Part shown: one piece after another, positions 8,046 through 30,146 of the stretch
Layout of the letters: the number at the start of each line of letters is the position of its first letter
How positions within the stretch are numbered: the first letter of the stretch is position 1
Sequence record: OZ196212.1
Reading direction: 5' to 3' (one strand)
Length of the DNA stretch: 64,000 nucleotides
Position numbers and translations under genes: made by a program
The notes under the pieces: model-generated
Databases searched by the model: none
What the model saw: only the letters and a program-made list of their open reading frames with translations
Told to the model about the DNA's origin: nothing

Positions 8046-8116
8046 GTTATTGTCTCAGTTGTTCATTTATCATGTATTTATGCAGATATAAAAAAAGCCC
8101 CTTTCGGAGCTTTTCG

Positions 8117-15295: not shown

Positions 15296-16729
15296 TTATA
15301 AAGCGTATCGGTCGACACCGACAGTCTTCAGCATGATTTTCACTGGCTCAAGCTCACCACCCAACAGCGACGTTAGAATTGAAGGGCTGCAACCCGACAC
15401 TAACGCTGTGTTCGCTTCACCTGATTTAACAGGCACGTTGTCTAGACGACCACGCAAGTTCCAGAACACTAGTTGCGGCATTTCGTAGCCCGCGTTCGCA
15501 TACATGACTTTGATTGCATCGAAGTTCGTAGTGTTACGAGTATGCCAGCCACCGCCAGTACGAGCTTGATCGAATTCCATATCGCTCATGATAAGCAATT
15601 TGGTTGGCATTTCGTCTTGCGACAAGTTTGCCGTACGAGCGCGTTCAAGAAGAACTTCGAAGCATCGTGTGATGTTCGTGCTCATATCTTCGCCAGATCG
15701 TTGCATGTTGTCAAGACGCGACTTCAAGCTATCACCCGTCAACTTGTGAAAGTGCGGATCACTTGAGAACGAAATGAATTGATCTTTGAAGATACCCTCA
15801 TTACGTTCAGCGACGTAGATGCCAAGAGACATCGCAACTTCTTTACAAGTCACACTACCACCGTGTTCACCGTTGATACCACAGCCCATAGAGCCAGAAA
15901 CATCAACAACTGGAATCACGCGCTCGTCAGAGCCTTCCATGTAGTTCGGTAGAGCTTTCCATTGCTCATTTGCAACACGATGGTCACCCATTTTAACGCT
16001 GCGAACAACATCGTATGGGTAAACAGCACCTGCATTGATCTTCGCTTCACCTTTCACAAGCGATGTGATGTACTCACCGTATGCAGATTCAGCGTTACGA
16101 CCGAATGCTTTCTGATAGCGTGCAGACGCTACAGATGGCAGTTTGCCGAACTCGATCTCGCCCCAATTACGAGCACACATCTTCTGTTCAACAGTGTCAG
16201 ACAAAAGAGAGATCACTTTACGCCACTGCTTCGCGTTTACACCAATCGACTTGATTGTGCGCTTGAACACGACTGCGTTTTTGCTGCGCTCACGAGGAAA
16301 CCACTTAGCAGCAAGCGCGTTTTTGTCATTGACAATCGCGTGTGTCCACAGAGTGATAGCATCAGCTTCAAGAGAAGTACCGAACGCAGATACTAAGTCA
16401 TCGAAACGACCAAGTTCTGGGATCTTGCGCATAACTAGACGCGCTACTTCTGGTTGTTCTTTACACAGACGTGCAAAGATTTTGCGGAAAGTACCGCGCT
16501 CACCTGCACCGCCACGCACGTCGCGAGACCATAGCAAGATGCGAGTTGCAAGCTCAGGGTTTTCACCGAATGCGCGATTAAACGCAGTTAGTGACTGATC
16601 ATTACCGCGCATAGCGCCGATAGTGAAGAACAAGTTTAGACACTCGTTACCCGAAGTGCTGTGTGTTACTGCACCGTTTGCTGTACGTGAATCGTTAGAT
16701 TGCATAGCGTTCATAAATAAACTAGTCAT
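15296..16729 (-). CDS. DUF2828 plus vWA domain protein (TROVE/Ro60-like architecture)
   Basis: TANGAVTHSTSG..LNLFF, RDVRGGAGER, LAAKWFPRE, GAVYPYDVV, MIDAS DVSGSM and SDMEFD; ATG 16729 has a GGAG RBS. Confidence 0.85.
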   Translation of the reverse strand: MTSLFMNAMQSNDSRTANGAVTHSTSGNECLNLFFTIGAMRGNDQSLTAFNRAFGENPELATRILLWSRDVRGGAGERGTFRKIFARLCKEQPEVARLVMRKIPELGRFDDLVSAFGTSLEADAITLWTHAIVNDKNALAAKWFPRERSKNAVVFKRTIKSIGVNAKQWRKVISLLSDTVEQKMCARNWGEIEFGKLPSVASARYQKAFGRNAESAYGEYITSLVKGEAKINAGAVYPYDVVRSVKMGDHRVANEQWKALPNYMEGSDERVIPVVDVSGSMGCGINGEHGGSVTCKEVAMSLGIYVAERNEGIFKDQFISFSSDPHFHKLTGDSLKSRLDNMQRSGEDMSTNITRCFEVLLERARTANLSQDEMPTKLLIMSDMEFDQARTGGGWHTRNTTNFDAIKVMYANAGYEMPQLVFWNLRGRLDNVPVKSGEANTALVSGCSPSILTSLLGGELEPVKIMLKTVGVDRYAL

Positions 16730-16765
16730 TGCTGTAAGCTCCAAATATCAAGGATCAGAAAAATA

Positions 16766-21192: not shown

Positions 21193-21281
21193 TGGCGGAG
21201 ATACTGGGAGTCGAACCCAGAGAACGCTATTAACGTCCGACACCTTAGCAGGGTGCTGTCATACCATTAGACCATATCTCC
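21193..21281 (-). tRNA. tRNA-Ser(GCT)
   Basis: cloverleaf, long variable arm, CCA. Confidence 0.95.
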
Positions 21282-21418
21282 AGTTCGGAATGCTGCTCTC
21301 ATTCTCAACTACATATTTGCTCTTATCGCTGCCGTGTAGTACGAGCTTCGCAGGTTCGCTTTCGATAATTTTAAGAGCAGGGCGACTCATACCAACTCTA
21401 TTCAAGCGAACTTGAATT

Positions 21419-21496
21419 TGGTGCCCAACCCGAGATTCGAACTCGGAACTTCTAGCGTTTGAAACTAGCGACTCTGCCAGATTGGCCTAGTTGGGC
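21419..21496 (-). tRNA. tRNA-Leu(CAA), short variable arm
   Basis: cloverleaf, CCA. Confidence 0.9.
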
Positions 21497-21502
21497 AATG
21501 TT

Positions 21503-21579
21503 TGGTACGCGTGGGCGGATTCGAACCGCCATCCCTGAGATTTTAAGCCTCATGCCTCTGCCAATTGGACCACACGCGC
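21503..21579 (-). tRNA. tRNA-Leu(TAA)
   Basis: cloverleaf, CCA. Confidence 0.93.
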
Positions 21580-21581
21580 AT

Positions 21582-21655
21582 TGGAGCTCGTACACAGAAT
21601 CGAACTGTGACCAAGTGATTTGCAATCACTTATACTACCGTTATACGATACGAGC
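21582..21655 (-). tRNA. tRNA-Cys(GCA)
   Basis: cloverleaf, U73, CCA. Confidence 0.93.
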
Positions 21656-21665
21656 AAATGTACTT

Positions 21666-21742
21666 TGGGGTGACAGACGGGGATCGAACCCGCATTTTCC
21701 GGAATCACAACCCGGAGGTATTTCCACTTCACCCACTGCCAC
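21666..21742 (-). tRNA. tRNA-His(GTG)
   Basis: cloverleaf, C73, CCA. Confidence 0.92.
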
Positions 21743-21813
21743 ACCAAAGTACACTCTGGGACATATAACGTTTATCAACCGGACTCATTTACGTGGGTCA
21801 TTCGAGCAAAGCA

Positions 21814-22059
21814 CTACTTTGCTAGTAAGTTTTCTTTCTTGAGATATATACTATCACTTGAGAGTTCGCGAGTAAACATATTTCTGAAATAAATTTGCAC
21901 ATCGTCTTCAGTCGTGTTCGACTCAATTTTCTGCGCTAATTCGAGAATTTTGCTTCGCTTGTATCCCTTTCGCCAACAGTCAAACATCAGTTTGTCCATT
22001 TCTTTCAGTTTTTCGACCTGATTCGAGTGTACATATTCGCGTGTTTCAAGTAATGACAT
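21814..22059 (-). CDS. hypothetical protein
   Basis: MSLLETRE start; the longer track ORF overlaps tRNA-Val. Confidence 0.6.
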   Translation of the reverse strand: MSLLETREYVHSNQVEKLKEMDKLMFDCWRKGYKRSKILELAQKIESNTTEDDVQIYFRNMFTRELSSDSIYLKKENLLAK

Positions 22060-22079
22060 AGTATATTGCTCATAAAGAA

Positions 22080-22154
22080 TGGTAGTCCCTGAGAATTTCG
22101 AAATCTCGACCTTCGCCATGTAAAAGCGGTGCTCTGCCTCTGAGCTAAGGGACT
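22080..22154 (-). tRNA. tRNA-Val(TAC)
   Basis: cloverleaf, CCA. Confidence 0.9.
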
Positions 22155-22159
22155 ATAAT

Positions 22160-22235
22160 TGGAACGTGTAACGAGATTCGAACTCGTACCTTCGGTTTGG
22201 AAGACCGTAATGCTACCGTTAAACACCATACACGC
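22160..22235 (-). tRNA. tRNA-Gly(TCC)
   Basis: cloverleaf, U73, CCA. Confidence 0.93.
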
Positions 22236-22527
22236 ATTGTTAATCAGACGCATTGAACAAGTCTTGAATTGCTTTCAAGTTGCTCAACTCTACTTCAAGT
22301 GTTCTTATAAAGAACGGGTTAGTCTCTACAGAGAGACGATATTCAACATCGCGAATGAATCGACCGATGTTGCCCTTGCTTAGTGTAAAGTAGTCATGCT
22401 TCTTTCTCTTCGTTTGAGGTTAGAATTAGATGAACGTGTTCGTTAACTTCTTGCTCAATCTGCCATTGTTCATAGACATATTCAGCATACAAAAGTGTTT
22501 CGTACATAATTCACCTTTCTTAAAATG

Positions 22528-22604
22528 TGGTAGTGACTCTGAGGTTCGAACTCAGTACCAGCGGCGTATGAAACCACGACTTTACCATCATAAGCTAAGT
22601 CACC
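22528..22604 (-). tRNA. tRNA-Met(CAT), elongator-like
   Basis: cloverleaf, CCA. Confidence 0.85.
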
Positions 22605-22608
22605 AAAG

Positions 22609-23045
22609 CAGATATTAACGTATTTAATCAGCACACGGGCTTGACACCACATTGTTTGTGGTCTACGTGAAGAACCTCTGCACAACAATCCCGCTCTAAT
22701 TGCGTTATGTGGTGACTGTCACGAGGAATCTAGTCTTCTTTAAGTGCCTTTCGGCTGTAATAAAGTACAGACAATAACGAAGTGTTTTTTCGTCTTTTAC
22801 ATAAATCGCAGTTGACTATCTTGTTACTCTAACAAGCAAGTATCGACTACCTCAGCGTCGCGCCTAGACTGTGTATTTCTACACGCCACATCTTTCGTTA
22901 CAAGTCTCGACCTAGCACGTTGTTGCTGTGCTGAACGTCTCGAACCCACGCTAAGACCTAATCATTGTTTTAGTAGATTAGTAGTTTGGTTGCTGCATAT
23001 TGTCTTACGTGACAGTCAAACACACAATGCCGAAACAATATGCCG
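22609..23045 (-). ncRNA. large nested structured RNA containing a YrlA-like module (element B, 22768-23005)
   Basis: AGACAATA/TATTGTCT stem with GCAGCAA; 10-bp inverted repeat 23008-23017/22714-22723; T-loop GGTTCGAG. Confidence 0.55.
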
Positions 23046-23100
23046 AGACGTTCACGCTCTTATTTTTCAAGTTCACACTATCGTAGTGACTCTCGTGATA

Positions 23101-23176
23101 TGGCATCCCCAGAAAGATTTGAACTTTCAACCCCGAATTTAGAAGATTCGTGCTCTTCCAATTGAGCTATGAGGAC
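23101..23176 (-). tRNA. tRNA-Arg(TCT)
   Basis: cloverleaf, CCA. Confidence 0.9.
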
Positions 23177-23252
23177 ATCAATAAGATTCGAACCATAAGA
23201 TCTTGTGACACGATGGTAGTAAAGAGAGTGTCTATCTCATGTGTTCGAAATT

Positions 23253-23328
23253 TGGTGGAGCTTGAGGGTTACGATCCCTCTACTTCTCCGTGCAAGGGAG
23301 ATGTTTTACCGATTAGCACTAAAGCCCC
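23253..23328 (-). tRNA. tRNA-Ala(TGC)
   Basis: G3:U70; atypical T-loop ATCGTAA. Confidence 0.9.
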
Positions 23329-23335
23329 AAATTGT

Positions 23336-23548
23336 CTATTTTAACTCTGTGACGCCTATATTTTTCCAATCAAACAGACCATCGACATCTTCAAGCGATT
23401 CGCCAGTCACGTCTGCAATATAAGCAGCGACTTTCGATTCGATTTCGTCATTACTTAGAGACTCATCAACAGTGAAAATCTCTTCGTTGTTATTACCACC
23501 GAATGTGCCGTTAATGTCGTATTCACACCAAACTGATATGTATTTCAT
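23336..23548 (-). CDS. hypothetical acidic protein
   Basis: 70-aa ORF between tRNAs. Confidence 0.65.
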   Translation of the reverse strand: MKYISVWCEYDINGTFGGNNNEEIFTVDESLSNDEIESKVAAYIADVTGESLEDVDGLFDWKNIGVTELK

Positions 23549-23573
23549 AATGTCTCACAAAGTTAATAAAATA

Positions 23574-23648
23574 TGGTGCTCCCGGACAGACTCGAACTGC
23601 CATAACCTGATTACAAAACAGGGATAATCGCCTTTATATTACGGGAGC
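23574..23648 (-). tRNA. tRNA-Thr(TGT)
   Basis: cloverleaf, U31:U39 mismatch, CCA. Confidence 0.85.
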
Positions 23649-23652
23649 GAAA

Positions 23653-23764
23653 CTGAGTGTCGTTTATACCGCGTCTCCAAGACCTGAGATACCAACTCAG
23701 CATGGGATTCGAACCCACCGACGTTTCTTGTATCGAAAGAAATTTTAAATTGCTGTAAACACTC
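23653..23764 (-). ncRNA. circularly permuted tRNA mimic (YrlA-like, element D)
   Basis: GAGTGT-TTACAGCAA...T arm GTGGG-TTCGAAT-CCCAT, then CTGAG/CTCAG hairpin...ACG-ACACTC-AG. Confidence 0.7.
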
Positions 23765-23773
23765 TTAGTATTT

Positions 23774-23847
23774 TGGCTGGGGATAACGGACTCGAACCGA
23801 TACTGCGAAAGTCAAAGTTTCGTATGCTGCCATTACATCAATCCCCT
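23774..23847 (-). tRNA. tRNA-Gln(TTG)
   Basis: cloverleaf, unpaired 1:72, CCA. Confidence 0.9.
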
Positions 23848-23855
23848 ATTGTTCT

Positions 23856-24080
23856 TTAGCGACTCGAATTGATCTCATCGATCATTCGTTTAGCTAGTTT
23901 CGTAGCTAGTGCTTTATCAGCATCGCCAGTTGTTTCTATGTCGTATGCAATTTTACTCACATACTTTGAGTCTAGCGCACCCGCTGATTGTTTAGACCAG
24001 TGATCCTTGACTTTCTGATATTTCGTCATGTCAATCGAATCTTTTGTCGCTTCACCCAAAAATTCTGCTAATGTTTTCAT
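23856..24080 (-). CDS. internal head protein-like, with capsid-targeting sequence
   Basis: MKTLAEFLGEA; perfect TATAAATA at 24110-24117. Confidence 0.75.
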   Translation of the reverse strand: MKTLAEFLGEATKDSIDMTKYQKVKDHWSKQSAGALDSKYVSKIAYDIETTGDADKALATKLAKRMIDEINSSR

Positions 24081-24119
24081 ATCTCTATTCTTATTAAAGT
24101 GTAAAAACATATTTATATG

Positions 24120-24269
24120 CAAGATAACATACACGACGGCGTAAGTAGTCGTTCTTATGTTTAGACTAGAAATCCACGTCACATCATTAATGCTATAATT
24201 GCGCCACTCTCTACTATGAATATGTTATGCATTATTCATGCAGACTCTTCTTGCGCTGTAAATTATCTT
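24120..24269 (-). ncRNA. structured RNA with variant motif (element E)
   Basis: AAGATAA-TTTACAGCG...TTATCTT-G; starts right after the tRNA-Asp CCA. Confidence 0.45.
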
Positions 24270-24345
24270 TGGCGGAACTGACGGGGCTCGAACCCGCTTC
24301 CTTCTCCGTGACAGGGAGGTATGCACCCAGTTACACCTCAGCTCC
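24270..24345 (-). tRNA. tRNA-Asp(GTC)
   Basis: cloverleaf, CCA. Confidence 0.92.
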
Positions 24346-24366
24346 CCAAAGATAACTCTTTGTATT

Positions 24367-24439
24367 AAGACACTGTAATCGTTTGGTTTTTTTCTTCAAA
24401 TAAAAAATACTGGTTTGTTTGCAGAATGATTACTATCTT
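24367..24439 (-). ncRNA. minimal motif RNA (element F)
   Basis: AAGATA-GTAATC-ATTCTGCAAAC...ACG-ATTAC-AG-TGTCTT. Confidence 0.55.
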
Positions 24440-24444
24440 AAATC

Positions 24445-24520
24445 TGGCAGGGACACTCAGATTCGAACTGAGACCAACGGGTTTGGAATCCGTCATGCTG
24501 CCATTAAACACCATGTCCCT
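24445..24520 (-). tRNA. tRNA-Trp(CCA)
   Basis: cloverleaf, CCA end. Confidence 0.9.
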
Positions 24521-24568
24521 ATTGCGTATGAGGTGGCTTAAATCAGTGGTCACTCTCACGCTAAAATT

Positions 24569-24642
24569 TGGTACTCACGAAGAGAATCGAACTCTTATCT
24601 GACGGTTATCAGCCGTCTGCTTTACCGTTAAGCTACGCGAGT
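24569..24642 (-). tRNA. tRNA-Ile(GAT)
   Basis: cloverleaf, CCA. Confidence 0.93.
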
Positions 24643-24707
24643 AAAGTACGCTCGAAAGCGCACAATGTTAATCGGTTAAGTGACTAGCTCGACCAATGTA
24701 ACATATT

Positions 24708-24800
24708 TGGAGGAAGATAACGGAGTCGAACCGTCACCGCGCTACTAACGCAATGGGCTGGTTTTCAAGACCAGTTGCGAACCACATCGCCCTATCTTCC
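24708..24800 (-). tRNA. tRNA-Ser(TGA)
   Basis: cloverleaf, long variable arm. Confidence 0.92.
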
Positions 24801-24805
24801 TTTAA

Positions 24806-25054
24806 TTACTTATGTCGTCCCCAATACATCTTATCAAAGCTGTTTAGGTATTCTTCGACTTTAGCTACATCAGCCGCACTAACAACCCATTCGTTGTCTT
24901 GAGTCGTGCGTTTATTCGCAGGAACTGCTTTAGCGCCTAATTTAGCCATTGTGTTTCTGTGTCGTTCGCGATCCATTGATCCACTAAAAAGTGAGCCAGA
25001 TACGCCGTACGTAACGTCCGTTGCTTCTGCAAGAAACTCTTGTAAAGTTTTCAT
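24806..25054 (-). CDS. internal head protein-like, with capsid-targeting sequence
   Basis: MKTLQEFLAEA (T4 IPII/IPIII: MKTYQEFIAE); CTAAATAT at 25079-25086. Confidence 0.8.
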   Translation of the reverse strand: MKTLQEFLAEATDVTYGVSGSLFSGSMDRERHRNTMAKLGAKAVPANKRTTQDNEWVVSAADVAKVEEYLNSFDKMYWGRHK

Positions 25055-25098
25055 GTTTTCCACCATTGTCTTAAAACAATATTTAGACGTTTAAAAAT

Positions 25099-25175
25099 TG
25101 GATGCGTGGGAGTGGATTCGAACCACTGACCTCCGGCTTATGAGACCGACGAGCTGACCGCTGCTCTACCCCGCA
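25099..25175 (-). tRNA. tRNA-Met(CAT), fMet-like with irregular acceptor stem
   Basis: TGCGGGG/CCCACGCA with an extra A; CAT anticodon. Confidence 0.75.
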
Positions 25176-25179
25176 ATTA

Positions 25180-25365
25180 TTACTTACTGAACTGCACTAC
25201 ACAAGTATCTGATTGATACACTATCGTGCCAGTTGCTTCCGCGTCTATTTGAACGATGCAGCCATTTGCCCCATCTTCACCGCGTGATGCTACATCTTTA
25301 ATCGAAATGCCACTTGAACAAGCTGTCAATGACAGTGCAAGTGCTAATGCTGCTATTGCTTTCAT
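25180..25365 (-). CDS. small lipoprotein
   Basis: MKAIAALALALSLTA-C signal peptide and lipobox. Confidence 0.75.
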   Translation of the reverse strand: MKAIAALALALSLTACSSGISIKDVASRGEDGANGCIVQIDAEATGTIVYQSDTCVVQFSK

Positions 25366-25381
25366 GATGTTCACCTTAATT

Positions 25382-25468
25382 TGGTGGTTCGCCTAGGACT
25401 CGAACCTAGAAGCCCGTTCAAGGGCGAGGGATTTACAATCCCCTGACTTACCATTAGTCTAACGAACC
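25382..25468 (-). tRNA. tRNA-Tyr(GTA)
   Basis: cloverleaf, long variable arm. Confidence 0.93.
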
Positions 25469-25474
25469 AGAATT

Positions 25475-25548
25475 TGGTACTCCGTACGGGAGTCGAACCC
25501 GTCCCTTTAGATTGAAAGTCTAACGATCTACCAATAATCTAACGGAGC
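25475..25548 (-). tRNA. tRNA-Glu(TTC)
   Basis: cloverleaf, CCA. Confidence 0.92.
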
Positions 25549-25672
25549 ATTGAAAAATTATTTATTAGCAAACTAGCAAGTTATCTGAGATAATCATTTA
25601 ACGGGCCCAGCTAGTAAACTAATAGATAATTTCTCATCTAGAGATAGTTTAGTGACTTCTCAACGGTCAATT

Positions 25673-25747
25673 TGGTGCGTCGCCTGAGATTCGAACTCAG
25701 ACTTTTCTGGTTAAAAGCCAGATGTACTACCATTATACGAACGACGC
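25673..25747 (-). tRNA. tRNA-Lys(TTT)
   Basis: cloverleaf, CCA. Confidence 0.93.
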
Positions 25748-25753
25748 ATTAAC

Positions 25754-25828
25754 TGGTGCACCCTCTCGGAATCGAACCGAGCACTGTGGGACTTCACTCC
25801 ACCGCTTTTCCTGATAAGCTAAGGGTAC
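25754..25828 (-). tRNA. tRNA-Phe(GAA), atypical anticodon loop
   Basis: loop GT-GAA-GT; CCA. Confidence 0.8.
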
Positions 25829-25834
25829 TTTATT

Positions 25835-25909
25835 TGGCGGACGTGGAGAATTTCGAAATCTCGACCCCGGTGTTAACAGCACCGCGCTCTGCCTCTGAGC
25901 TACACATCC
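25835..25909 (-). tRNA. tRNA-Asn(GTT)
   Basis: cloverleaf, G73, CCA. Confidence 0.93.
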
Positions 25910-25914
25910 AAATT

Positions 25915-25991
25915 TGGTACGCAGAGAGAGATTCGAACTCTCAACTCCTAGTTTCTAAGACTAGCGGCTCTGCCAATTGGCCTACCTGCGC
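25915..25991 (-). tRNA. tRNA-Leu(TAG)
   Basis: cloverleaf, CCA. Confidence 0.92.
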
Positions 25992-26004
25992 ACTGTGTAA
26001 ATAA

Positions 26005-26079
26005 TGGTCGGAGTAGAAGAATTCGAATCTTCACCGCTCGGCCCCAAACCGACTATGCTGCCATTAACACCATACTCCG
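26005..26079 (-). tRNA. tRNA-Pro(TGG)
   Basis: cloverleaf, CCA. Confidence 0.92.
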
Positions 26080-26107
26080 AAAAACTTTTGTAGAACTTCG
26101 TTCTTAC

Positions 26108-26302
26108 ATTGTACATGATGTTTTCTTCGTTGTAAACATCTTTTTTGAAAAACTTTTCGTTCGTTTTCGAACGTTTAAATGCTTTTCTCTATTGTACATG
26201 ATGTTTTCGTCATTGTAAACATCTTTTTTTAAATCTTTTTGAATGACTTAACGTTTTTGTTTTAACACGTTAATCATATCACTCGTTTACGACTCGTTAA
26301 AC
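26108..26302 (-). promoter_or_regulatory. three tandem sigma70-like early promoters driving the left tRNA block
   Basis: TTTACA-N17-TACAAT at 26136-26108 and 26219-26191 with A-tract UP elements; TTTAAC-N17-TATGAT near 26300. Confidence 0.8.
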
Positions 26303-26378
26303 ACTTATTTGTGAATAATTTCGTTAAATTCTATCATCGCGACAGTAGATAACGAGACACGGTCCTAAACGTATCGTT

Positions 26379-26454
26379 TGGCACTCGATATAAGATTCGA
26401 ACTTATAACCTGCGCCTTCGTAGGACGCTGCTCTTCCAATTGAGCTAATCGAGC
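26379..26454 (-). tRNA. tRNA-Arg(ACG)
   Basis: cloverleaf, CCA. Confidence 0.93.
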
Positions 26455-26537
26455 ATTAAAGCTTGTTTGCTTTCTTTGTTTATCATACTCTGCTTTGAAA
26501 GCATGTTAAACAAAGAATTTCAGTTTATTTCGCCCAT

Positions 26538-26563
26538 AAAAAAGGACGCTAATCTGCGTCCTC
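26538..26563 (-). terminator. intrinsic terminator
   Basis: AGGACGC-AGATTA-GCGTCCTTTTTT. Confidence 0.75.
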
Positions 26564-26823
26564 AAGTATACTTCTATGTTATACTTTCGGACTACATTCG
26601 TGGATCCCATTTCTGGTTGCCAAACGTCGGATTCGCCAGATATACCGATACTGAGCTAAAGCGCATTTCGCTTCGTAAAATCTCAATATGTGTATTAGAA
26701 TGTGGCATCGTGGCTCTCTTTTCGAACGTAAAAATTGTTGTTTTGTTTTTTCTATAATTGTACTTATAAGACTAAAATCGAGGTTTCGTGCGTTTTTTGC
26801 AAAAAACCTCGAAAAAAGTGAAA

Positions 26824-27063
26824 TTATTTTTTAAAGTGCTTTCTTTTATTGCACTCAGCTAAGATTTCATTGTCATAATGATTCTGAAGCTGCTTGAATT
26901 TCTTGTGCTGATCTGGCGTTAGCTCATTCTCATCACGAAGATTTTTCAAGAACCCAAGAGGTTTACGAAACGACTTGCGATACGAGTCTAAACGCTGATC
27001 AGTCAAACCGACTAGTTGTTTAGGCGTTAGCAATGTCTTATTAATGTCAAAGTTCTTACTCAT
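26824..27063 (-). CDS. hypothetical basic protein
   Basis: 79-aa ORF with AAGGGG RBS. Confidence 0.65.
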   Translation of the reverse strand: MSKNFDINKTLLTPKQLVGLTDQRLDSYRKSFRKPLGFLKNLRDENELTPDQHKKFKQLQNHYDNEILAECNKRKHFKK

Positions 27064-27085
27064 GTGTTACCCCTTGTATTGAAAT

Positions 27086-27200
27086 TGGCTGACCGATGCG
27101 GGACTCGAACCCACGACCACGTGCTTAACAGGCAATTAGAAATGCGGTAGCGATACTTATCAATATCATTTACGTGCTCTACCACTGAGCTAATCGGTCA
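27086..27200 (-). tRNA. tRNA-Asn(GTT)-like RNA with a 38-nt insertion in the anticodon stem
   Basis: D arm, intact CT-GTT-AA loop, T arm, GCCA; insert 27134-27171. Confidence 0.75.
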
Positions 27201-27205
27201 ATTGT

Positions 27206-27449
27206 TTAGTTCGCTTTTGCAGTGCACCGAGCCACCTCAGAATTGATACATTTCGTTTGACGCGCATTCGGATGGTTACGCTTTGCGTCGTGAGTCTGTC
27301 AGCGATGCATGGCATACACACACCCCGTTTCTCACCTACTCTGCCCTACAGACGTTATCTGCTTGGTTAACAATTGCACTCGCATTAGGTATAACATGTC
27401 ACCGTCATCTTCCGGACGATTTCAGTGTATGCACTCAAAAGCGAACTAA
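27206..27449 (-). ncRNA. ~244-nt structured RNA of unknown class
   Basis: ~20-bp terminal helix TTAGTTCGCTTTTG-AGTGCA / TGCACT-GCAAAAGCGAACTAA. Confidence 0.65.
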
Positions 27450-27462
27450 TGTTGATTCTATT

Positions 27463-28011
27463 CTACTTCTCTCGCAATGTAAACAGCAGATTGCGATAAT
27501 CGAAGTTTCGTTTGTTCTTTGTATTGTAGAAGCTAGTCCAGTCGATTGCAACGGGACAATTCTTACTACCGACACGAGCAATGAATATCTCGTGTGTCGC
27601 GCTGTGCTTCGCGTTATAAGCTCTTACTCGTTTTTCATAGTGAGCTATGTATTCTGCACAAGCAGCGTTGTAATCAGCTCTAGAGAACGTCTTACCTTTC
27701 ATAAAGCGTGCATCAAGATACGGACGAATAACCCGAACGCGTTCTCCCGACCATGCCATATTAAAGCTGTTTTCAATTTCACCTAGAATTTGACCAGTCT
27801 TTAAGTTACGGCTCAGTATGACCCAACAGCGTGTACGACGATAGTCTTCAAAACGCATCACCTTAATGTGTGCATTAATGAATTCATCGCGTTTAGCGTT
27901 GCACTCAATGCGTGCTGCACGACGCTGTTCTTCAGTCATCGACTCTCGAACTTCTTTCGGATACAATGTAGCAAAGCGTTTCGGGCAATCTGCCATCGTT
28001 AGCTTTTTCAT
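27463..28011 (-). CDS. hypothetical protein
   Basis: 182-aa basic ORF. Confidence 0.7.
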   Translation of the reverse strand: MKKLTMADCPKRFATLYPKEVRESMTEEQRRAARIECNAKRDEFINAHIKVMRFEDYRRTRCWVILSRNLKTGQILGEIENSFNMAWSGERVRVIRPYLDARFMKGKTFSRADYNAACAEYIAHYEKRVRAYNAKHSATHEIFIARVGSKNCPVAIDWTSFYNTKNKRNFDYRNLLFTLREK

Positions 28012-28217
28012 ATCATACCTCTCTTGCGTTTAAGTTGCGAACGCTCAATTTGATTGAAGACTTGCTTATCTTTTGCTTTATTGCGTCGAGAATTACCCCA
28101 ACGACTTCCAGCACATACACCAAAGCGGTCTTTTTTAAGCTTCTTAGCTAACCACAATGGTACTTCGACACGAGCACGTAAGTAGTGCTTTGCGATGTCT
28201 TTATAAGTCTTGCCCAT
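28008..28217 (-). CDS. hypothetical basic protein
   Basis: GAGG RBS, MGKTYKDI start. Confidence 0.65.
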   Translation of the reverse strand: MGKTYKDIAKHYLRARVEVPLWLAKKLKKDRFGVCAGSRWGNSRRNKAKDKQVFNQIERSQLKRKRGMI

Positions 28218-28230
28218 GATAATTTCCTCT

Positions 28231-28471
28231 TGTTGCCGCTCCGTGGAATCGAACCACGTCAAACACAACACCTCGTCAGCCCAATAAGAGTTTCGAAGTA
28301 AGAGCTTACTAGCACATTAAAGCACGGGGCATTATTTCTCTCAAGCAGTTTTCGACCACCGCGTGAGCTTTCTTATCCCCAGTCCCAGTGATTCAGAACG
28401 AAACATGATAGCGAGTCATGAGTTGAACTAATGTTGGGAAAACACTGCGTATTGTACACCGAGTAAGCGGC
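28231..28471 (-). ncRNA. tmRNA-like RNA (tRNA-like domain closing ~200 nt)
   Basis: GCCGCTT/GAGCGGC acceptor, CGTGG-TTCGATT-CCACG T arm, no D stem. Confidence 0.6.
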
Positions 28472-28485
28472 ATTGTTAATAAACT

Positions 28486-28605
28486 TGGTGCCCTACGTGA
28501 ACGTTGAACGTTTTTCTACTTAGCTTCCATCTACCTCACTCAACGAAGAGCTATAGATTCCGTCAAGGTCTACTTCCACTTGACTAAGCGATTCAAACGT
28601 AGGAC
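28486..28605 (-). ncRNA. 120-nt CCA-ended non-tRNA stable RNA
   Basis: GTCCTACGT/ACGTAGGGC-A-CCA; nested helices; no T arm. Confidence 0.65.
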
Positions 28606-28644
28606 ATATTTTGAAAGTAGTCTCGTAAAACTACTTTGAGAATA

Positions 28645-28722
28645 TGGTGACCCTCGTGGGACTCGAACCCAACTATCTTTCGGTTATGAGCCGACTGCTT
28701 TTACCAGTTAAGCTAAAGGGCC
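28645..28722 (-). tRNA. tRNA-Ile2(CAT, lysidine type)
   Basis: GGCCCTT acceptor like ileX; CT-CAT-AA loop. Confidence 0.8.
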
Positions 28723-29105: not shown

Positions 29106-29228
29106 TGGTGGAGAGTGCGGGATTCGAACCACGCGGCCAAAAGATTTACTTAGTTAGTGTTTGCAGCATGAATACTTGACAATATTCTGTCAACGTTCTT
29201 TTGCTCTACCAGACTGAGCTAACTCTCC
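29106..29228 (-). ncRNA. CCA-ended tRNA scaffold with motif insert in place of the anticodon loop (T1)
   Basis: GGAGAGT/ACTCTCC-A-CCA, D arm, AAAGA/TCTTT stem enclosing ~52 nt. Confidence 0.7.
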
Positions 29229-29234
29229 ATTTAA

Positions 29235-29374
29235 AACACATTGAGCAGGGTGCAGGATTCGAACCTGCGTCACGATCTTAGAATGATATGCTGTTTGGGT
29301 TGCTGAATACAAGCTATACAACTTGCGTTTATGCTACGTGTGCTAGCCACTACACCAACCCTGCTCAATGTGTT
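29235..29374 (-). ncRNA. tRNA mimic with 17-bp extended acceptor and motif insert (T2)
   Basis: D arm, T arm GCAGG-TTCGAAT-CCTGC, no CCA, ATTCAGCAACC. Confidence 0.75.
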
Positions 29375-29607
29375 CTAGTGCAATGCCATATGAACTCACA
29401 TGGCATCACTGAACCTGTTTTATATTGCCTTAGCTAACCAACACAATCTGAAATCGTGCGCTTTAATAAAGGGAGGGCGTCCCTCTTCGCCAGTTAGCAT
29501 AGATGTGTTGCTATGCACCCATTTGTCAATCATGTCCAAGGCAAACAGAACAATGAATACGAGTGCGAGAAGATATACAATCAAATTGAAACACCTCGCT
29601 AAAAAGT

Positions 29608-29753
29608 TAGAGCATATTGGTCGTGCGTACTAGAATCGAACTAGTCCTACGATCTCCTAATGATATGCGTTATTGGTTGCTGAATACTTACTTGTCAGTA
29701 AGCGTTATGCTACGTGTGCTGCCACTACACCAACGCACGACCAATATGCTCTA
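29608..29753 (-). ncRNA. tRNA mimic with 21-bp extended acceptor and motif insert (T3)
   Basis: paralogous to T2; T arm ACTAG-TTCGATT-CTAGT. Confidence 0.75.
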
Positions 29754-30019: not shown

Positions 30020-30146
30020 TAATCTTAGCAGCTTTTTCGCTGAAGTCAAACACTTTTTTCAAATTTCTTTCATCGAATCAAGAGTTTGTGTTGCTGTCTC
30101 TCGACTCGATGAAATACATTCTACAGGAAAACAAAGCGAAGTCAAC
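30020..30146 (-). promoter_or_regulatory. two tandem sigma70-like promoters with a motif hairpin (30068-30114) between them
   Basis: TTGACT-N16-TAGAAT and TTGACT-N16-TAAGAT with A-rich UP elements. Confidence 0.7.

What the first reader, a model, noticed from the sequence alone, without database searches (positions are those of the whole stretch)
29235..29753. Two paralogous tRNA mimics with no anticodon, no CCA and 17-21 bp acceptor extensions
T2 (29235-29374) and T3 (29608-29753) keep D and T arms. Their anticodon arm carries the shared sequence ACGTAGCATAA(A)CG-[stem]-TG-loop-[stem]-TATTCAGCAACC...GCATATCATT...GATCGT. The internal stems differ but both pair (CAAG/CTTG; CTTAC/GTAAG). The acceptor helix continues as a long perfect duplex, so these RNAs cannot be charged as encoded. 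They look like Y RNAs in the opposite permutation to YrlA.
Basis: partly seen in the sequence, partly recalled or inferred. Interest (0 to 1): 0.86.

Follow-up and report, generated by a model that had tools for sequence, protein, structure and literature searches.

The report
Phage tRNA-shaped Y RNAs, circularly permuted
Two genes long annotated as broken tRNAs in KVP40-like Vibrio phages look like conserved, tRNA-shaped partner RNAs ("Y RNAs") for the phage's own Ro60-like protein, in a circularly permuted layout of the RNAs found next to that protein's gene in many other phages.

Summary
T2 (29235-29374) and T3 (29608-29753), both on the minus strand, have D and T arms, a shared insert in place of the anticodon arm, and perfect 17 and 21 bp terminal helices. 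One detail is wrong: T3 carries A-CCA directly after a 7 bp acceptor stem.

The window is a KVP40-like Vibrio phage. KVP40 annotates related neighbouring elements as pseudo-tRNAs and leaves its own T2 and T3 unannotated. In nine relatives the terminal helix, inner hairpin and T stem keep pairing through compensatory changes.

The window's DUF2828/DUF7788 protein (15296-16729, minus strand) has a predicted fold that best matches Ro60.

In other phages, DUF2828 genes are flanked on the same strand by RNAs with one shared module: a terminal stem, then (U/A)NCAGCAA. These phages include T4-like marine phages, Felixounavirus, Listeria, Campylobacter and mycobacteriophages. Many of these RNAs hold a tRNA-like core in YrlA order (T arm, closed acceptor, D arm).

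Cut in the hairpin loop and rejoined at the acceptor, T2 and T3 align end to end with those RNAs. In native order they split into two swapped halves.

Best reading (about 0.6): T2 and T3, and probably T0 and T1, are Y-RNA-like partners of the phage Ro60-like protein. This is a new variant of a known kind. Binding is untested.

The parts
29608..29753 (-). T3, a tRNA-shaped RNA of 146 nt in tRNA order (D arm before T arm).
   Evidence: CM R1 scores 130 bits. ARAGORN intron mode reports 29618-29739.
29733..29753 (-). T3 terminal helix, 5' strand (21 nt). The last 7 nt are the acceptor 5' strand CGUGCGU.
   Evidence: Perfect 21 bp duplex. Compensatory changes among orthologues.
29608..29628 (-). 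T3 terminal helix, 3' strand: ACGCACG (acceptor), then A-CCA, then AUAUGCUCUA.
29716..29730 (-). T3 D arm, GUGU-AGUGGCA-GCAC.
   Evidence: Invariant in all orthologues. Matches the D arm of RNAs next to DUF2828 genes, UAGUGUAACGGCAGCAC.
29687..29702 (-). T3 inner hairpin, CUUAC-UGACAA-GUAAG. It corresponds to the terminal stem of the YrlA-order RNAs.
   Evidence: 6 of 6 pairs have double-sided changes. Permutation alignment.
29676..29686 (-). T3 motif UAUUCAGCAAC, proposed as the protein-binding signature.
   Evidence: The same motif follows the 5' stem strand in RNAs flanking DUF2828 genes.
29629..29645 (-). T3 T arm, ACUAG-UUCGAUU-CUAGU.
   Evidence: 4 of 5 pairs covary.
29235..29374 (-). 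T2, a tRNA-shaped RNA of 140 nt and paralogue of T3. It has a 17 bp terminal helix and no CCA.
   Evidence: CM R1 scores 138 bits.
29310..29325 (-). T2 inner hairpin, CAAG-UUGUAUAG-CUUG.
   Evidence: Orthologues have GAUUC-UGAUAA-GAAUC and CAAGC-UGUUAA-GUUUG.
29299..29309 (-). T2 motif UAUUCAGCAAC.
29109..29228 (-). T1, a tRNA-like gene with an intact anticodon stem (AAAGA/UCUUU) and encoded ACCA. Its 52 nt insert carries a diverged module: GAAUAU-UGUCAA-GUAUUC-AUGCUGCAAAC.
   Evidence: Rfam tRNA 49.8 bits.. L076 copies with the same acceptor carry the canonical module.
27090..27199 (-). T0, a tRNA-like gene with a 49 nt insert: GAUAU-UGAUAA-GUAUC-G-CUACCGCAUU.
   Evidence: Rfam tRNA 49.1 bits. 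The same CUACCGCAUU motif occurs in the YrlA-order RNAs of L236 and L245.
15296..16729 (-). Gene for the DUF2828/DUF7788 protein (477 aa), the predicted Ro60-like ring protein and proposed partner.
   Evidence: Pfam. PHROG 850 'RNA-binding protein'. AF2 model plus Foldseek hits to Ro60. 694 phage records hold homologues, some annotated 'Ro-like RNA binding protein'.
30022..30145 (-). Two sigma-70-like promoter matches upstream of T3: TTGACT-16-TAGAAT and TTGACT-16-TAAGAT.
   Evidence: These are consensus matches only.

Best explanation
T2 and T3 are non-decoding, tRNA-shaped RNAs that act as Y-RNA-like partners of the phage's Ro60-like protein, the DUF2828/DUF7788 gene at 15296-16729. Their paralogues T0 and T1 probably do the same.

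Each RNA has two parts.

- A handle. This is the covarying hairpin plus the adjoining UAUUCAGCAAC, sitting where the anticodon arm should be. It is the same module that forms the 5'/3' terminal stem of the small RNAs encoded beside DUF2828 genes in many phages. I infer that it is the protein-binding site.
- A cargo. This is the tRNA elbow: D arm, T arm and acceptor. As in bacterial YrlA and Yrn1, it would present a tRNA-like surface to other factors, such as an exoribonuclease like PNPase, tRNA enzymes or a defence nuclease.

In this phage lineage the RNA is circularly permuted relative to the YrlA-order form. The handle is closed by a UGAYAA loop. The ends lie at the acceptor, which is lengthened to 17-21 bp. 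That helix probably defines and protects the ends and keeps the RNA out of aminoacylation.

Shown: conservation, covariation, the permutation relationship, genomic linkage of the module to DUF2828 genes, and the Ro60-like predicted fold.

Inferred: binding, the mature ends, and the downstream role. The role is most plausibly RNA surveillance or counter-defence.
For: 1. RNA-level selection. In 20 orthologues, 99.2% of cells pair against 84.6% in shuffles, and 21 pairs have double-sided changes. G-U pairs occur only in the minus-strand sense.

2. Ro60-like partner. The AF2 model (pLDDT 76, pTM 0.71) has four top Foldseek matches, all Ro60/TROVE: 9l5y chains A and B, 2nvo and 9kop. E = 5e-7 to 2e-6, over about 510-540 aligned columns.

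3. Homologues in mycobacteriophages (30-36% identity) are annotated 'Ro-like RNA binding protein'. In JoeDirt, three stem-CAGCAAU modules lie 40-290 nt downstream of that gene. The middle one is a full-length Rfam YrlA match, 39.8 bits, E = 1.6e-5.

4. A pattern search that used no protein information found one true divergent T2/T3 homologue (L019). It lies about 80 nt upstream of a DUF2828 gene on the same strand.

5. Strict descriptor (stem, motif, T loop, UGAYWW tail): 25 hits on the gene strand and 0 on the other in 80 loci. Of 24 close loci, 14 have one upstream, and 9 of those end within about 12-55 nt of the start codon. Relaxed descriptor: 61 hits against 4 in 160 loci, and in the 80 loci mapped none lies inside the gene.

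6. The same module is read directly from sequence next to DUF2828 genes in Listeria, Campylobacter and Felixounavirus phages, and as a minimal terminator-ended sRNA in AT-rich marine phages.

7. Permutation. A profile was built only from natural YrlA-order RNAs. It matches permuted KVP40 T2 over positions 1-115 at 37.8 bits. Permuted window T2 scores 20.8 bits and permuted window T3 12.1 bits. Native orders split into two swapped partial hits. The best of 300 shuffles scores 5.2 bits.

8. Precedent. Phage phiLo Ro60 binds two Y-like RNAs encoded beside it and also host PNPase (PMC12135203). D. radiodurans Yrn1 has the opposite orientation to YrlA and a 5 bp stem with a 6 nt 'anticodon' loop (PMC4201824). 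A Felixounavirus Ro60-like protein next to tRNA genes counters the Ppl defence system, and the authors guessed that some of those 'tRNAs' are Y RNAs (bioRxiv 10.1101/2024.10.10.617714).
Against: - No binding, expression or processing data exist for these RNAs.
- In this phage the RNAs lie about 12.5 kb from the DUF2828 gene. They are on the same strand but with the tRNA cluster between them, not within the 4 kb used to define YrlA.
- DUF2828 genes often sit beside tRNA clusters, so part of the linkage could be shared synteny rather than partnership.
- Sequence searches do not link DUF2828 to Ro60 (E = 1.4). The link rests on a medium-confidence model with TM about 0.5.
- The bacterial Ro-binding motif GNCGAA is absent from T2. 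T3 orthologues have only GUCGAG or GUCGUG in the terminal helix.
- Rfam YrlA does not reach gathering score anywhere. The 28-bit window hit is a chimera of the T2 T arm and the T1 D arm.
- Many DUF2828 loci showed no module with my descriptors.
- T1, T3, L019 and the L076 copies carry CCA, so a role that involves charging is not excluded.
Confidence: 0.6

Rival explanations
1. The conserved module binds some factor other than the DUF2828 protein, for example host PNPase, Hfq, RNase E or III, or another phage protein. On this reading T2 and T3 are tRNA-like decoys or sponges for host tRNA-targeting defence nucleases or tRNA enzymes. The proximity to DUF2828 genes would then reflect a shared 'RNA island' around tRNA clusters.
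For: - DUF2828 genes commonly adjoin tRNA clusters.
- In the window the RNAs sit inside the tRNA cluster, 12.5 kb from the gene.
- In L082 the YrlA-order RNA precedes a different ORF, 1.1 kb from DUF2828.
- An RtcB ligase lies near the DUF2828 gene in a Listeria phage, consistent with a tRNA damage and repair theme.
Against: - The module abuts the DUF2828 start codon or lies within a few hundred nt, on the same strand, in very distant phage groups whose other neighbours differ.
- Ro60 proteins are known to be encoded beside their Y RNAs (PMC4201824, PMC12135203).
Confidence: 0.2
2. T2 and T3 are precursors of real tRNAs. The insert would be an intron or processed spacer, removed by cleavage and ligation to give a decoding tRNA. 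KVP40-type phages encode RNA ligases.
For: - tRNAscan and ARAGORN in intron mode call them intron-bearing tRNAs.
- T1 and T1b keep a 5 bp anticodon stem. KVP40 T1 begins its insert with AUGUUAA, a plausible Asn loop.
- T1 and T3 have encoded CCA.
Against: - T2 and T3 have no anticodon stem, at most 2-3 bp (ACG/CGU).
- The putative anticodons differ among orthologues, and U33 is lost in window T1.
- No group I or other intron or ribozyme family matches.
- The 'insert' is the most conserved part. It also exists as a free-standing sRNA and as the terminal stem of permuted RNAs, which an intron would not.
- The cluster already holds ordinary tRNAs for all 20 amino acids.
Confidence: 0.06
3. They are cis-acting processing or regulatory structures of the tRNA-operon transcript. 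They would be RNase III or RNase P entry sites, or stabilisers for flanking small ORFs, with no function in trans.
For: - The 17-21 bp perfect helices are RNase III-sized.
- tRNA-Asp in the same cluster also has a 9 bp leader-trailer extension.
- YrlA-order RNAs overlap the Shine-Dalgarno region of DUF2828, so some family members may act in cis as leaders.
Against: - A processing signal does not need an invariant D arm, T loop, GCAUAUCAU and UAUUCAGCAAC.
- The minimal forms have their own promoter-like sequence and intrinsic terminator.
Confidence: 0.1
4. They are decaying pseudo-tRNAs with no function, as the KVP40-family annotations imply.
For: Relatives annotate the related copies as tRNA-Pseudo or tRNA-OTHER, and phi-Grn1 labels its T3 that way. 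The genome papers call them 'pseudo-forms' (PMC3468402, PMC5107563).
Against: - Compensatory changes occur in three helices.
- Blocks in the insert are invariant across phages whose flanks are only about 75-80% identical.
- Homologues occur in distant phages.
Confidence: 0.03

Closest known systems
YrlA (Rfam RF02553), the bacterial and mycobacteriophage Y RNA with a tRNA-like domain (Chen et al. 2014, PMC4201824)
   Same: - It has a tRNA-like D arm, T arm and acceptor element.
- It is encoded on the same strand as a Ro60-type gene.
- It has a stem plus a short conserved motif as the presumed protein site.
- The RNAs upstream of DUF2828 genes in L093, L260 and JoeDirt give sub-threshold YrlA hits: 27.8 bits (E = 0.076, not significant) for L093, 40.1 bits (E = 1.2e-5) for L260 and 39.8 bits (E = 1.6e-5) for JoeDirt.
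   Different: - T2 and T3 have the opposite circular permutation: the ends lie at the acceptor and the handle is closed by a loop.
- The motif is (U/A)NCAGCAA, not GNCGAA.
- No hit reaches the Rfam gathering score of 69 bits.
- The RNAs lie 12.5 kb from the protein gene.
Yrn1, the Y RNA of Deinococcus radiodurans
   Same: As described in PMC4201824, its T and D arms have the opposite orientation to YrlA. The stem-loop between them sits at the anticodon-arm position, with a 5 bp stem and a 6 nt loop. This is the same layout and the same loop size as the T2/T3 hairpin (CUUAC-UGACAA-GUAAG).
   Different: - In Yrn1 the Ro-binding sequences lie in the 5'/3' terminal stem. In T2 and T3 the conserved module is in the anticodon-arm position, and the terminal helix varies freely in sequence.
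- Yrn1 lacks a full D arm.
- No sequence comparison with Yrn1 was made here.
Thermus phage phiLo Ro60 with Yrl1 and Yrl2 (PMC12135203; PDB 9kop, 9l5y)
   Same: - It is a phage-encoded Ro60-type ring with two paralogous Y-like RNAs.
- It is the best structural match to the window protein.
- It forms a complex with host PNPase.
   Different: - Yrl1 and Yrl2 lie directly upstream of the gene, carry a CGAA motif and are not described as tRNA-shaped.
- The protein has a recognisable TROVE domain. The window protein matches only DUF2828/DUF7788.
KVP40 'tRNA-Pseudo-3/4/5' and the phi-Grn1 'tRNA-Val/Asn/Phe/Cys/OTHER' annotations
   Same: They cover the same gene family at the same locus. Pseudo-3 is T0, Pseudo-4 is T1 and Pseudo-5 is T1b. 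phi-Grn1 tRNA-Cys is T2 and its tRNA-OTHER is T3.
   Different: They were treated as defective or intron-bearing tRNAs. KVP40 T2 and T3 are not annotated at all. No link to the DUF2828 protein was made.
Phage T4 species 1 and 2 stable RNAs (rnaC, rnaD)
   Same: They are stable non-tRNA RNAs of unknown function in the syntenic tRNA cluster downstream of genes 57A and 57B. rnaC ends in a T arm plus an acceptor-like stem.
   Different: They show no D arm plus T arm cloverleaf, no CAGCAA module and no detectable similarity to T2 or T3 on reading.
Bas63 (Felixounavirus) gp130, a Ro60-like counter of the Ppl defence system (bioRxiv 10.1101/2024.10.10.617714)
   Same: It is a Ro60-like protein directly upstream of a phage tRNA cluster. 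The authors guessed that some of those 'tRNAs' are Y RNAs. Felixounavirus homologues of the window protein (about 45% identity) are followed by four stem-CAGCAA RNAs among the tRNAs.
   Different: The RNAs were not identified in that work. I did not verify that Bas63 gp130 itself is the DUF2828 homologue. The defence-counter role is shown only for that phage.

Membership tests
Canonical tRNA (Rfam RF00005) | 7 bp acceptor stem with discriminator and 3' CCA (encoded in all but one of this phage's 26 ordinary tRNAs) | tested here: inconclusive
   T3 has a 7 bp stem plus A-CCA, but it is buried in a 21 bp duplex. T2 has a 7 bp stem followed by U-CAA and no CCA.
Canonical tRNA (Rfam RF00005) | 5 bp anticodon stem with a 7 nt loop carrying an anticodon | tested here: not met
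   At most 2-3 bp (ACG/CGU) flank a 66-68 nt insert. The inner hairpin loop is 6 or 8 nt and its sequence differs among orthologues.
Canonical tRNA (Rfam RF00005) | Detection by the family model at gathering score | tested here: not met
   T2 and T3 are absent from the Rfam gathering and E<=10 lists and from default ARAGORN. T0 and T1 pass at 49 bits with large inserts.
Canonical tRNA (Rfam RF00005) | D arm and T arm with conserved elbow nucleotides (U8, GG in the D loop, UUCGAAU-type T loop) | tested here: met
   UG-GUGU-AGUGGC(U)A-GCAC and the UUCGA(A/U)U T loops are invariant across orthologues.
YrlA (Rfam RF02553) | Score at or above the gathering threshold of 69 bits | tested here: not met
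   The only window hit scores 28.2 bits and spans the T2 T arm plus the T1 D arm, so it is a chimera. Related loci score 27.8-40.1 bits.
YrlA (Rfam RF02553) | Order: 5' stem, T arm, closed acceptor hairpin, D arm, 3' stem | tested here: not met
   T2 and T3 have the D arm before the T arm with open ends at the acceptor. The YrlA order is met by relatives upstream of DUF2828 genes.
YrlA (Rfam RF02553) | GNCGAAN0-1G motif near the 5' end | tested here: not met
   The motif is absent. The conserved motif is UAUUCAGCAAC.
YrlA (Rfam RF02553) | Encoded within 4 kb of the Ro60 gene on the same strand | tested here: not met
   The strand is the same, but the distance from T2 to the gene start is about 12.5 kb. 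The criterion is met by homologous RNAs in L019, L059, L060, L076, L093, L100, L105, JoeDirt, and the Listeria and Campylobacter phages.
Y RNA (functional class: RNA partner of a Ro60-type protein) | The genome encodes a Ro60-type ring protein (HEAT-repeat TROVE ring plus vWA domain) | tested here: met
   By predicted fold only. The top four PDB matches are Ro60/TROVE over the full length. There is no Pfam TROVE hit and no significant sequence match to Ro60.
Y RNA (functional class: RNA partner of a Ro60-type protein) | A conserved stem-plus-motif module shared by RNAs encoded beside the protein gene across lineages | tested here: met
   and the permutation test.
Y RNA (functional class: RNA partner of a Ro60-type protein) | Physical binding to the Ro60-type protein | not testable with these tools
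   This needs RIP or CLIP, EMSA or a structure.
Group I intron-containing bacterial or phage tRNA | An intron of 200 nt or more with a group I core, inserted in an otherwise intact anticodon loop | tested here: not met
   The insert is 50-70 nt. No Rfam intron or ribozyme family matches at E<=10. T2 and T3 have no anticodon stem.
T4 rnaC/rnaD-type stable RNAs | Sequence or structure homology to T4 species 1 or 2 RNA | tested here: inconclusive
   The cluster position is syntenic and rnaC has a T arm. No shared module was seen on reading, and no formal alignment was made.

The most novel reading that the evidence does not exclude
The stem-CAGCAA handle may be a general loading tag. Phages from many families would use it to mount interchangeable tRNA-shaped cargos on a Ro60-like ring. 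The cargos seen include permuted tRNA-like cores, tRNA-order cores with CCA ends, an anticodon-stem-loop mimic, and even a complete tRNA embedded between the handle strands (L260, 868-938).

On this reading the RNP is a counter-defence device that protects, repairs or decoys tRNAs attacked by host immunity. The CCA-bearing members (T1, T3, L019, L076) would be processed and perhaps aminoacylated while bound to the ring.
Probability: 0.15. Interest if true: 0.85.

Novelty: new variant of a known kind. Interest (0 to 1): 0.68.

Why it matters
- It gives a function-level reading to genes that have been called pseudo-tRNAs since the KVP40 genome of 2003.
- It links the very widespread DUF2828 phage protein to specific RNA partners through a simple, searchable signature: a stem followed by (U/A)NCAGCAA. 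The protein has at least 7,900 relatives in metagenomes and occurs in 694 isolate genomes, including Felixounavirus, Listeria, Staphylococcus, Campylobacter and mycobacteriophages.
- It shows the same RNA in three topologies: a minimal sRNA, YrlA order and tRNA order. This is a natural circular-permutation series that tells which part is the handle and which is the cargo.
- One such protein has been reported to counter a bacterial defence system. The RNAs named here make that mechanism directly testable in E. coli K-12 and V. natriegens phage systems.

Tried and rejected
- Rfam on the whole window and on the region at E<=10 gave no family other than tRNA, plus a chimeric sub-threshold YrlA hit. 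No intron or ribozyme matched. No YrlA-like hit lies near the window's DUF2828 gene.
- The exact-pattern search for T2/T3 in IMG/VR returned only KVP40 and VH7D. The metagenome scan gave 13 hits, of which 12 were chance and one was real (L019).
- The pattern GTGTAACGGNAGCACACAGGTC re-found three known loci plus an unrelated tRNA(UCA) with no DUF2828 gene nearby. It was therefore not a useful unbiased test.
- The pattern TGAYAANNNNNTATTCAGCA gave more than 115 hits, mostly chance. After requiring stem pairing and a T loop, only the L076 contig remained.
- ARAGORN in intron mode over 80 DUF2828 loci found insert-bearing tRNA-like genes in only some. The AGUCCUG...ACAA family in AT-rich contigs lacks the CAGCAA motif, and I did not place it.
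- Two internal helices proposed by RNAalifold in T2 and T3 (GUAGC/GCAAC and CAUAUC/GAU-CGUG) are invariant, so they have no covariation support. The first is not kept in the L076 copies.
- Sequence-only links from DUF2828 to Ro60 in the PDB were not significant.
- T4 rnaC and rnaD showed no shared module.
- The KVP40 genome paper (PMC180978) is not held in the library.
- MAFFT misaligned the two YrlA-order subtypes, so I built no second covariance model. I used explicit descriptors and an nhmmer profile instead.
Full report
WHAT IS THERE

The window matches Vibrio phages D482 and 6E35.1a at 100% and is related to KVP40 (genus Schizotequatrovirus). Its minus strand carries a tRNA cluster of 26 ordinary tRNAs at 21193-28722.

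Upstream of that cluster, in the direction of transcription, lie four tRNA-like genes with large inserts where the anticodon arm should be:
- T0, 27090-27199
- T1, 29109-29228
- T2, 29235-29374
- T3, 29608-29753

Rfam's tRNA model accepts T0 and T1 at 49 bits with inserts of 49-52 nt. It misses T2 and T3. ARAGORN finds T2 and T3 only in intron mode.

- a perfect 17 or 21 bp terminal helix
- U-G, then the D arm GUGU-AGUGGC(U)A-GCAC
- ACGUAGCAUAA(A)CG
- a 4-5 bp hairpin
- UAUUCAGCAAC, GCAUAUCAUU and GAUCGU
- a T arm, then the 3' strand of the helix

Both fold well beyond shuffled controls, with z = -4.0 and -6.9.

One correction is needed. T3 has a 7 bp acceptor stem followed by A-CCA, paired to its leader. 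T2 has no CCA. All but one of the ordinary tRNAs here encode CCA.

CONSERVATION

Fifty-one Vibrio phage records hold the region. KVP40 annotates T0, T1 and an extra copy (T1b) as tRNA-Pseudo-3, -4 and -5, and leaves T2 and T3 unannotated. phi-Grn1 calls the set tRNA-Val, Asn, Phe, Cys and OTHER. The genome papers mention only 'pseudo-forms' (PMC3468402, PMC5107563).

I aligned 20 orthologues of T2 and T3, of which 16 are distinct.
- 99.2% of cells pair, against 84.6% in column shuffles.
- The covariation score is 0.435 against 0.151. Slid controls give 0.08 or less.
- Double-sided changes occur in 11 of 20 pairs of the terminal helix, 6 of 6 of the inner hairpin and 4 of 5 of the T stem.
- G-U pairs occur in the minus-strand sense, so selection acts on the RNA and not on a DNA inverted repeat.
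- The D stem and two further helices proposed by RNAalifold never vary, so they are neither supported nor refuted.

Two sigma-70-like promoter matches lie upstream of T3.

THE PROTEIN

The window's DUF2828/DUF7788 protein is encoded at 15296-16729 on the minus strand. It belongs to PHROG 850, 'RNA-binding protein'. It has no significant sequence match to Ro60.

An AlphaFold2 model built on 27 homologues has pLDDT 76 and pTM 0.71. Its top four PDB matches are all Ro60 or TROVE proteins:
- Thermus phage phiLo Ro60 (9l5y chains A and B, and 9kop)
- D. radiodurans Rsr (2nvo)

These matches have E = 5e-7 to 2e-6, probability 1.0 and TM 0.48-0.55 over about 510-540 aligned columns. The next hits cover only the vWA domain.

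The family is very large, with at least 7,932 hits in metagenomes. It occurs in 694 isolate phage genomes, including Felixounavirus, Listeria, Staphylococcus, Campylobacter, Aeromonas and mycobacteriophages. In the mycobacteriophages it is annotated 'Ro-like RNA binding protein'.

THE LINK BETWEEN RNA AND PROTEIN

A metagenome scan with an RNA-only pattern gave one true divergent homologue, L019. It has the same D arm, ACGUAGCA, a 7 bp hairpin, UUUCAGCCAC, AGCAUAUCAU, AGAUCGUG and a T arm. It also has a 7 bp acceptor stem plus U-CCA and no extension. A DUF2828 gene starts about 80 nt downstream on the same strand.

A covariance model built from T2, T3 and L019 found two tandem tRNA-like RNAs about 500 nt downstream of another DUF2828 gene (L076). 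They have CCA ends and the module ACG-CAAAC-UGAYAA-GUUUG-UAUUCAGCA.

In L059, L060, L082, L093, L100 and L105, RNAs on the gene strand upstream of the DUF2828 gene carry the same blocks in a different order. In four of these loci they lie within about 100 nt of the start codon. In L059 and L082 they lie about 0.8 and 1.1 kb upstream. Their order is:
- 5' stem strand, then (N)UUC(A/C)GCAA(C)
- an A-rich linker
- GGGA, then the T arm
- an acceptor-like hairpin closed by a GNRA or UUCG loop, or by a short linker
- U(A/G), then the D arm
- an A-rich linker
- 3' stem strand, then UGAUAA, which often runs into the Shine-Dalgarno sequence

That is the YrlA layout.

The terminal stems differ and still pair. 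Examples are GAAUCA/UGAUUC, GAAUGA/UCAUUC, AGAUCGU/GCGAUCU, AGAUUAU/AUAAUCU, GGAUAC/GUAUCC, GGCUAA/UUAGCC and GAUUACU/AGUAAUC.

Two descriptor searches give counts.
- Strict descriptor: 25 hits on the gene strand and none on the other in 80 loci. Of the 24 loci with protein at least 72% identical to that of L093, 14 have a hit, and 9 of those end 12-55 nt before the start codon.
- Relaxed descriptor: 61 hits against 4 in 160 loci. In the 80 loci where I mapped positions, none lies inside the gene.

Other clades show further forms of the module.
- AT-rich clades have a minimal form 210-310 nt downstream of the gene, for example GGAAGG-UUUCAGCAAUC...CCUUCC-UGACA. In L091 and L102 it is followed by an intrinsic terminator.
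- Listeria phage LMTA-94 has three such RNAs directly upstream of the gene. Campylobacter phage F356 has two.
- Felixounavirus BPS15Q2 has four among the tRNAs downstream of the gene. One of them has a YrlA-order tRNA-like core whose D arm is UUGGUGUAAUGGUAGCAC.
- Mycobacteriophage JoeDirt has three just downstream of its Ro-like gene. The middle one is a full-length Rfam YrlA hit, 39.8 bits, E = 1.6e-5, which is below the gathering score.
- L260 has an array of at least five modules with different cargos. One is a YrlA-like core (40.1 bits, E = 1.2e-5). Another is a complete tRNA lying between the handle strands.

PERMUTATION

I cut T2, T3 and L019 at the 3' end of the hairpin loop and rejoined them at the acceptor. 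They then align end to end with the natural YrlA-order RNAs.

I also built an nhmmer profile from natural YrlA-order RNAs only (116 positions).
- Permuted KVP40 T2 matches positions 1-115 in a single hit of 37.8 bits.
- Permuted window T2 scores 20.8 bits, permuted KVP40 T3 20.5 bits and permuted window T3 12.1 bits.
- The native sequences give two partial hits in swapped order: profile 68-115 with residues 6-50, and profile 1-61 with residues 52-117.
- The best of 300 shuffles scores 5.2 bits. The E-values refer to that small database.

So the inner hairpin plus UAUUCAGCAAC of T2 and T3 is the counterpart of the 5'/3' stem plus motif of the other forms. The UGAYAA loop is the counterpart of their 3' tail. 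The long terminal helix replaces their closed acceptor hairpin.

The T0 module (GUAUC-G-CUACCGCAUU) matches a different YrlA-order subtype, GAAUCG-CUACCGCAUU in L236 and L245. T1 shares its acceptor stem with the first L076 copy (5898-6021). The whole T0-T3 set therefore belongs to the family.

MECHANISM

Shown:
- RNA-level constraint
- a shared module
- the permutation
- strand- and position-specific linkage to DUF2828 genes across distant phages
- a Ro60-like predicted fold

Inferred:
- The DUF2828 ring binds the handle.
- The tRNA-like elbow is the effector surface, as in the bacterial Ro60, Y RNA and PNPase complexes and in phage phiLo (PMC4201824, PMC12135203).
- The 17-21 bp helix sets and protects the ends, possibly through RNase III.
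- The RNP acts in RNA surveillance or counter-defence. A Felixounavirus Ro60-like protein beside tRNA genes was reported to counter the Ppl system, and its authors guessed that some neighbouring 'tRNAs' are Y RNAs (bioRxiv 10.1101/2024.10.10.617714). I did not verify that this protein is the DUF2828 homologue.

CAVEATS

- There are no expression or binding data.
- The RNAs lie 12.5 kb from the gene in this phage.
- DUF2828 genes often sit beside tRNA clusters, so some of the linkage may be synteny.
- The Ro60 link rests on a medium-confidence model.
- Rfam YrlA is never reached at gathering score.
- Many DUF2828 loci gave no hit with my descriptors.
- The CCA-bearing members may have a charging-related role.

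COMPARISON AND NOVELTY

Already known:
- Y RNAs with tRNA-like domains
- phage Ro60 homologues with adjacent Y-like RNAs
- the two opposite orientations (YrlA and Yrn1)

In the library I could search, I found no description of:
- the identification of the KVP40-family 'pseudo-tRNAs' as such RNAs
- the stem-(U/A)NCAGCAA signature shared across DUF2828 phages
- the series of three topologies

I rate this a new variant of a known kind.

Noticed in passing
window 24270-24345 (-) and flanks: The ordinary tRNA-Asp also has a leader-trailer extension of its acceptor stem: UAUCUUUGG pairs with CCAAAGAUA, 9 bp including the CCA. tRNA-His has a shorter one. Extended acceptor helices are therefore not unique to T2 and T3 in this cluster.
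   Followed up: no
window 28230-28420 (-); also 23706, 23185 and 19972 (-): There are T-arm-like motifs (GUUCGAnUC with flanking stems) outside any called tRNA. The one at 28246 is followed by GAGCGGCAAC and a Shine-Dalgarno sequence just before the ORF starting at about 28216. It may be a degenerate member of the same RNA family.
   Followed up: partly
window 29383-29406 (-): A hairpin (AUGCCAUGU...AUAUGGCAU) lies between the small ORF and T2. Relatives keep it with entirely different sequence, for example GUGCUUGUG...CACAAGCAC. It is a covarying RNA element without a U tract, possibly a processing or stabilising hairpin.
   Followed up: partly
window 29420-29584 (-): A conserved small ORF of 54 aa lies between T3 and T2. 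It has a TTG start after GAGGUG and a hydrophobic N-terminus. KVP40 annotates a CDS (KVP40.0319) in this interval, and there is no PHROG match.
   Followed up: partly
window 16729-16737 (-); L026 about 27 nt upstream of the gene: UUACAGCAA overlaps the start codon of the DUF2828 gene (UUACAGCAAUG). In VH7D, UACAGCAAU lies in the 5' UTR. In several other phages a stem-ACAGCAA-stem hairpin directly precedes the Shine-Dalgarno sequence of the gene (L058, L059, L082). This suggests autoregulation of the protein's own mRNA by the same motif.
   Followed up: partly
L260 700-1420: An array of at least five stem-UACAGCAA modules lies upstream of a DUF2828 gene, each with a different cargo. One cargo is a complete tRNA (Rfam 47.5 bits, 868-938) embedded between the handle strands. 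Another is a 5 bp hairpin with a 7 nt CUUUUAA loop.
   Followed up: partly
L001 4146-4258 (KVP40 tRNA-Pseudo-5) and equivalents in L002 and L006-L009: Six of the nine relatives, KVP40 among them, carry a fifth copy (T1b) between T1 and T2. It has the acceptor GGUGAAG, an intact anticodon stem CCGGC/GCCGG and the insert AAGUC-UGAUAA-GAUUU-CAUUCUGCAU. It is absent from the window phage, F86, VS1 and CZ01.
   Followed up: partly
L307 5852-7063 (Listeria phage LMTA-94): An RtcB-type 'tRNA-splicing ligase' gene lies 1.3 kb downstream of the DUF2828 gene. This echoes the rsr-yrlBA-rtcBA arrangement of Salmonella.
   Followed up: no
L107 5163-5265: A tRNA with anticodon loop CUUCAAA (anticodon UCA) and a long variable arm sits in a 167 kb viral contig. 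It could be an opal suppressor or a Sec-like tRNA. It shares the D arm and anticodon-stem sequence GUGUAACGGUAGCACACAGGUC with the YrlA-order RNAs.
   Followed up: no
L048-L050, about 7000-8400: A separate family of tRNA-like genes lies among tRNAs downstream of DUF2828 in AT-rich contigs: AGUCCUGUGGCGGAAUUGGUAGACGC, then a 40-120 nt insert, then ACAGGUUCGAAUCCUGUCAGGACUACAA. It has no CAGCAA motif and ends in ACAA.
   Followed up: no
window 25103-25176 (-): The ARAGORN 'tRNA-Met' here is the only one of the 26 without an encoded CCA; it ends ...CCCACGCA. Its first base pair looks irregular.
   Followed up: no
L308 583-657 and 7334-end (Aeromonas phage Ahp1): Two 'tRNA-Pseudo' annotations flank the DUF2828 homologue in a T4-like Aeromonas phage. 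The second is about 114 nt long and may be another insert-bearing tRNA-like RNA.
   Followed up: no
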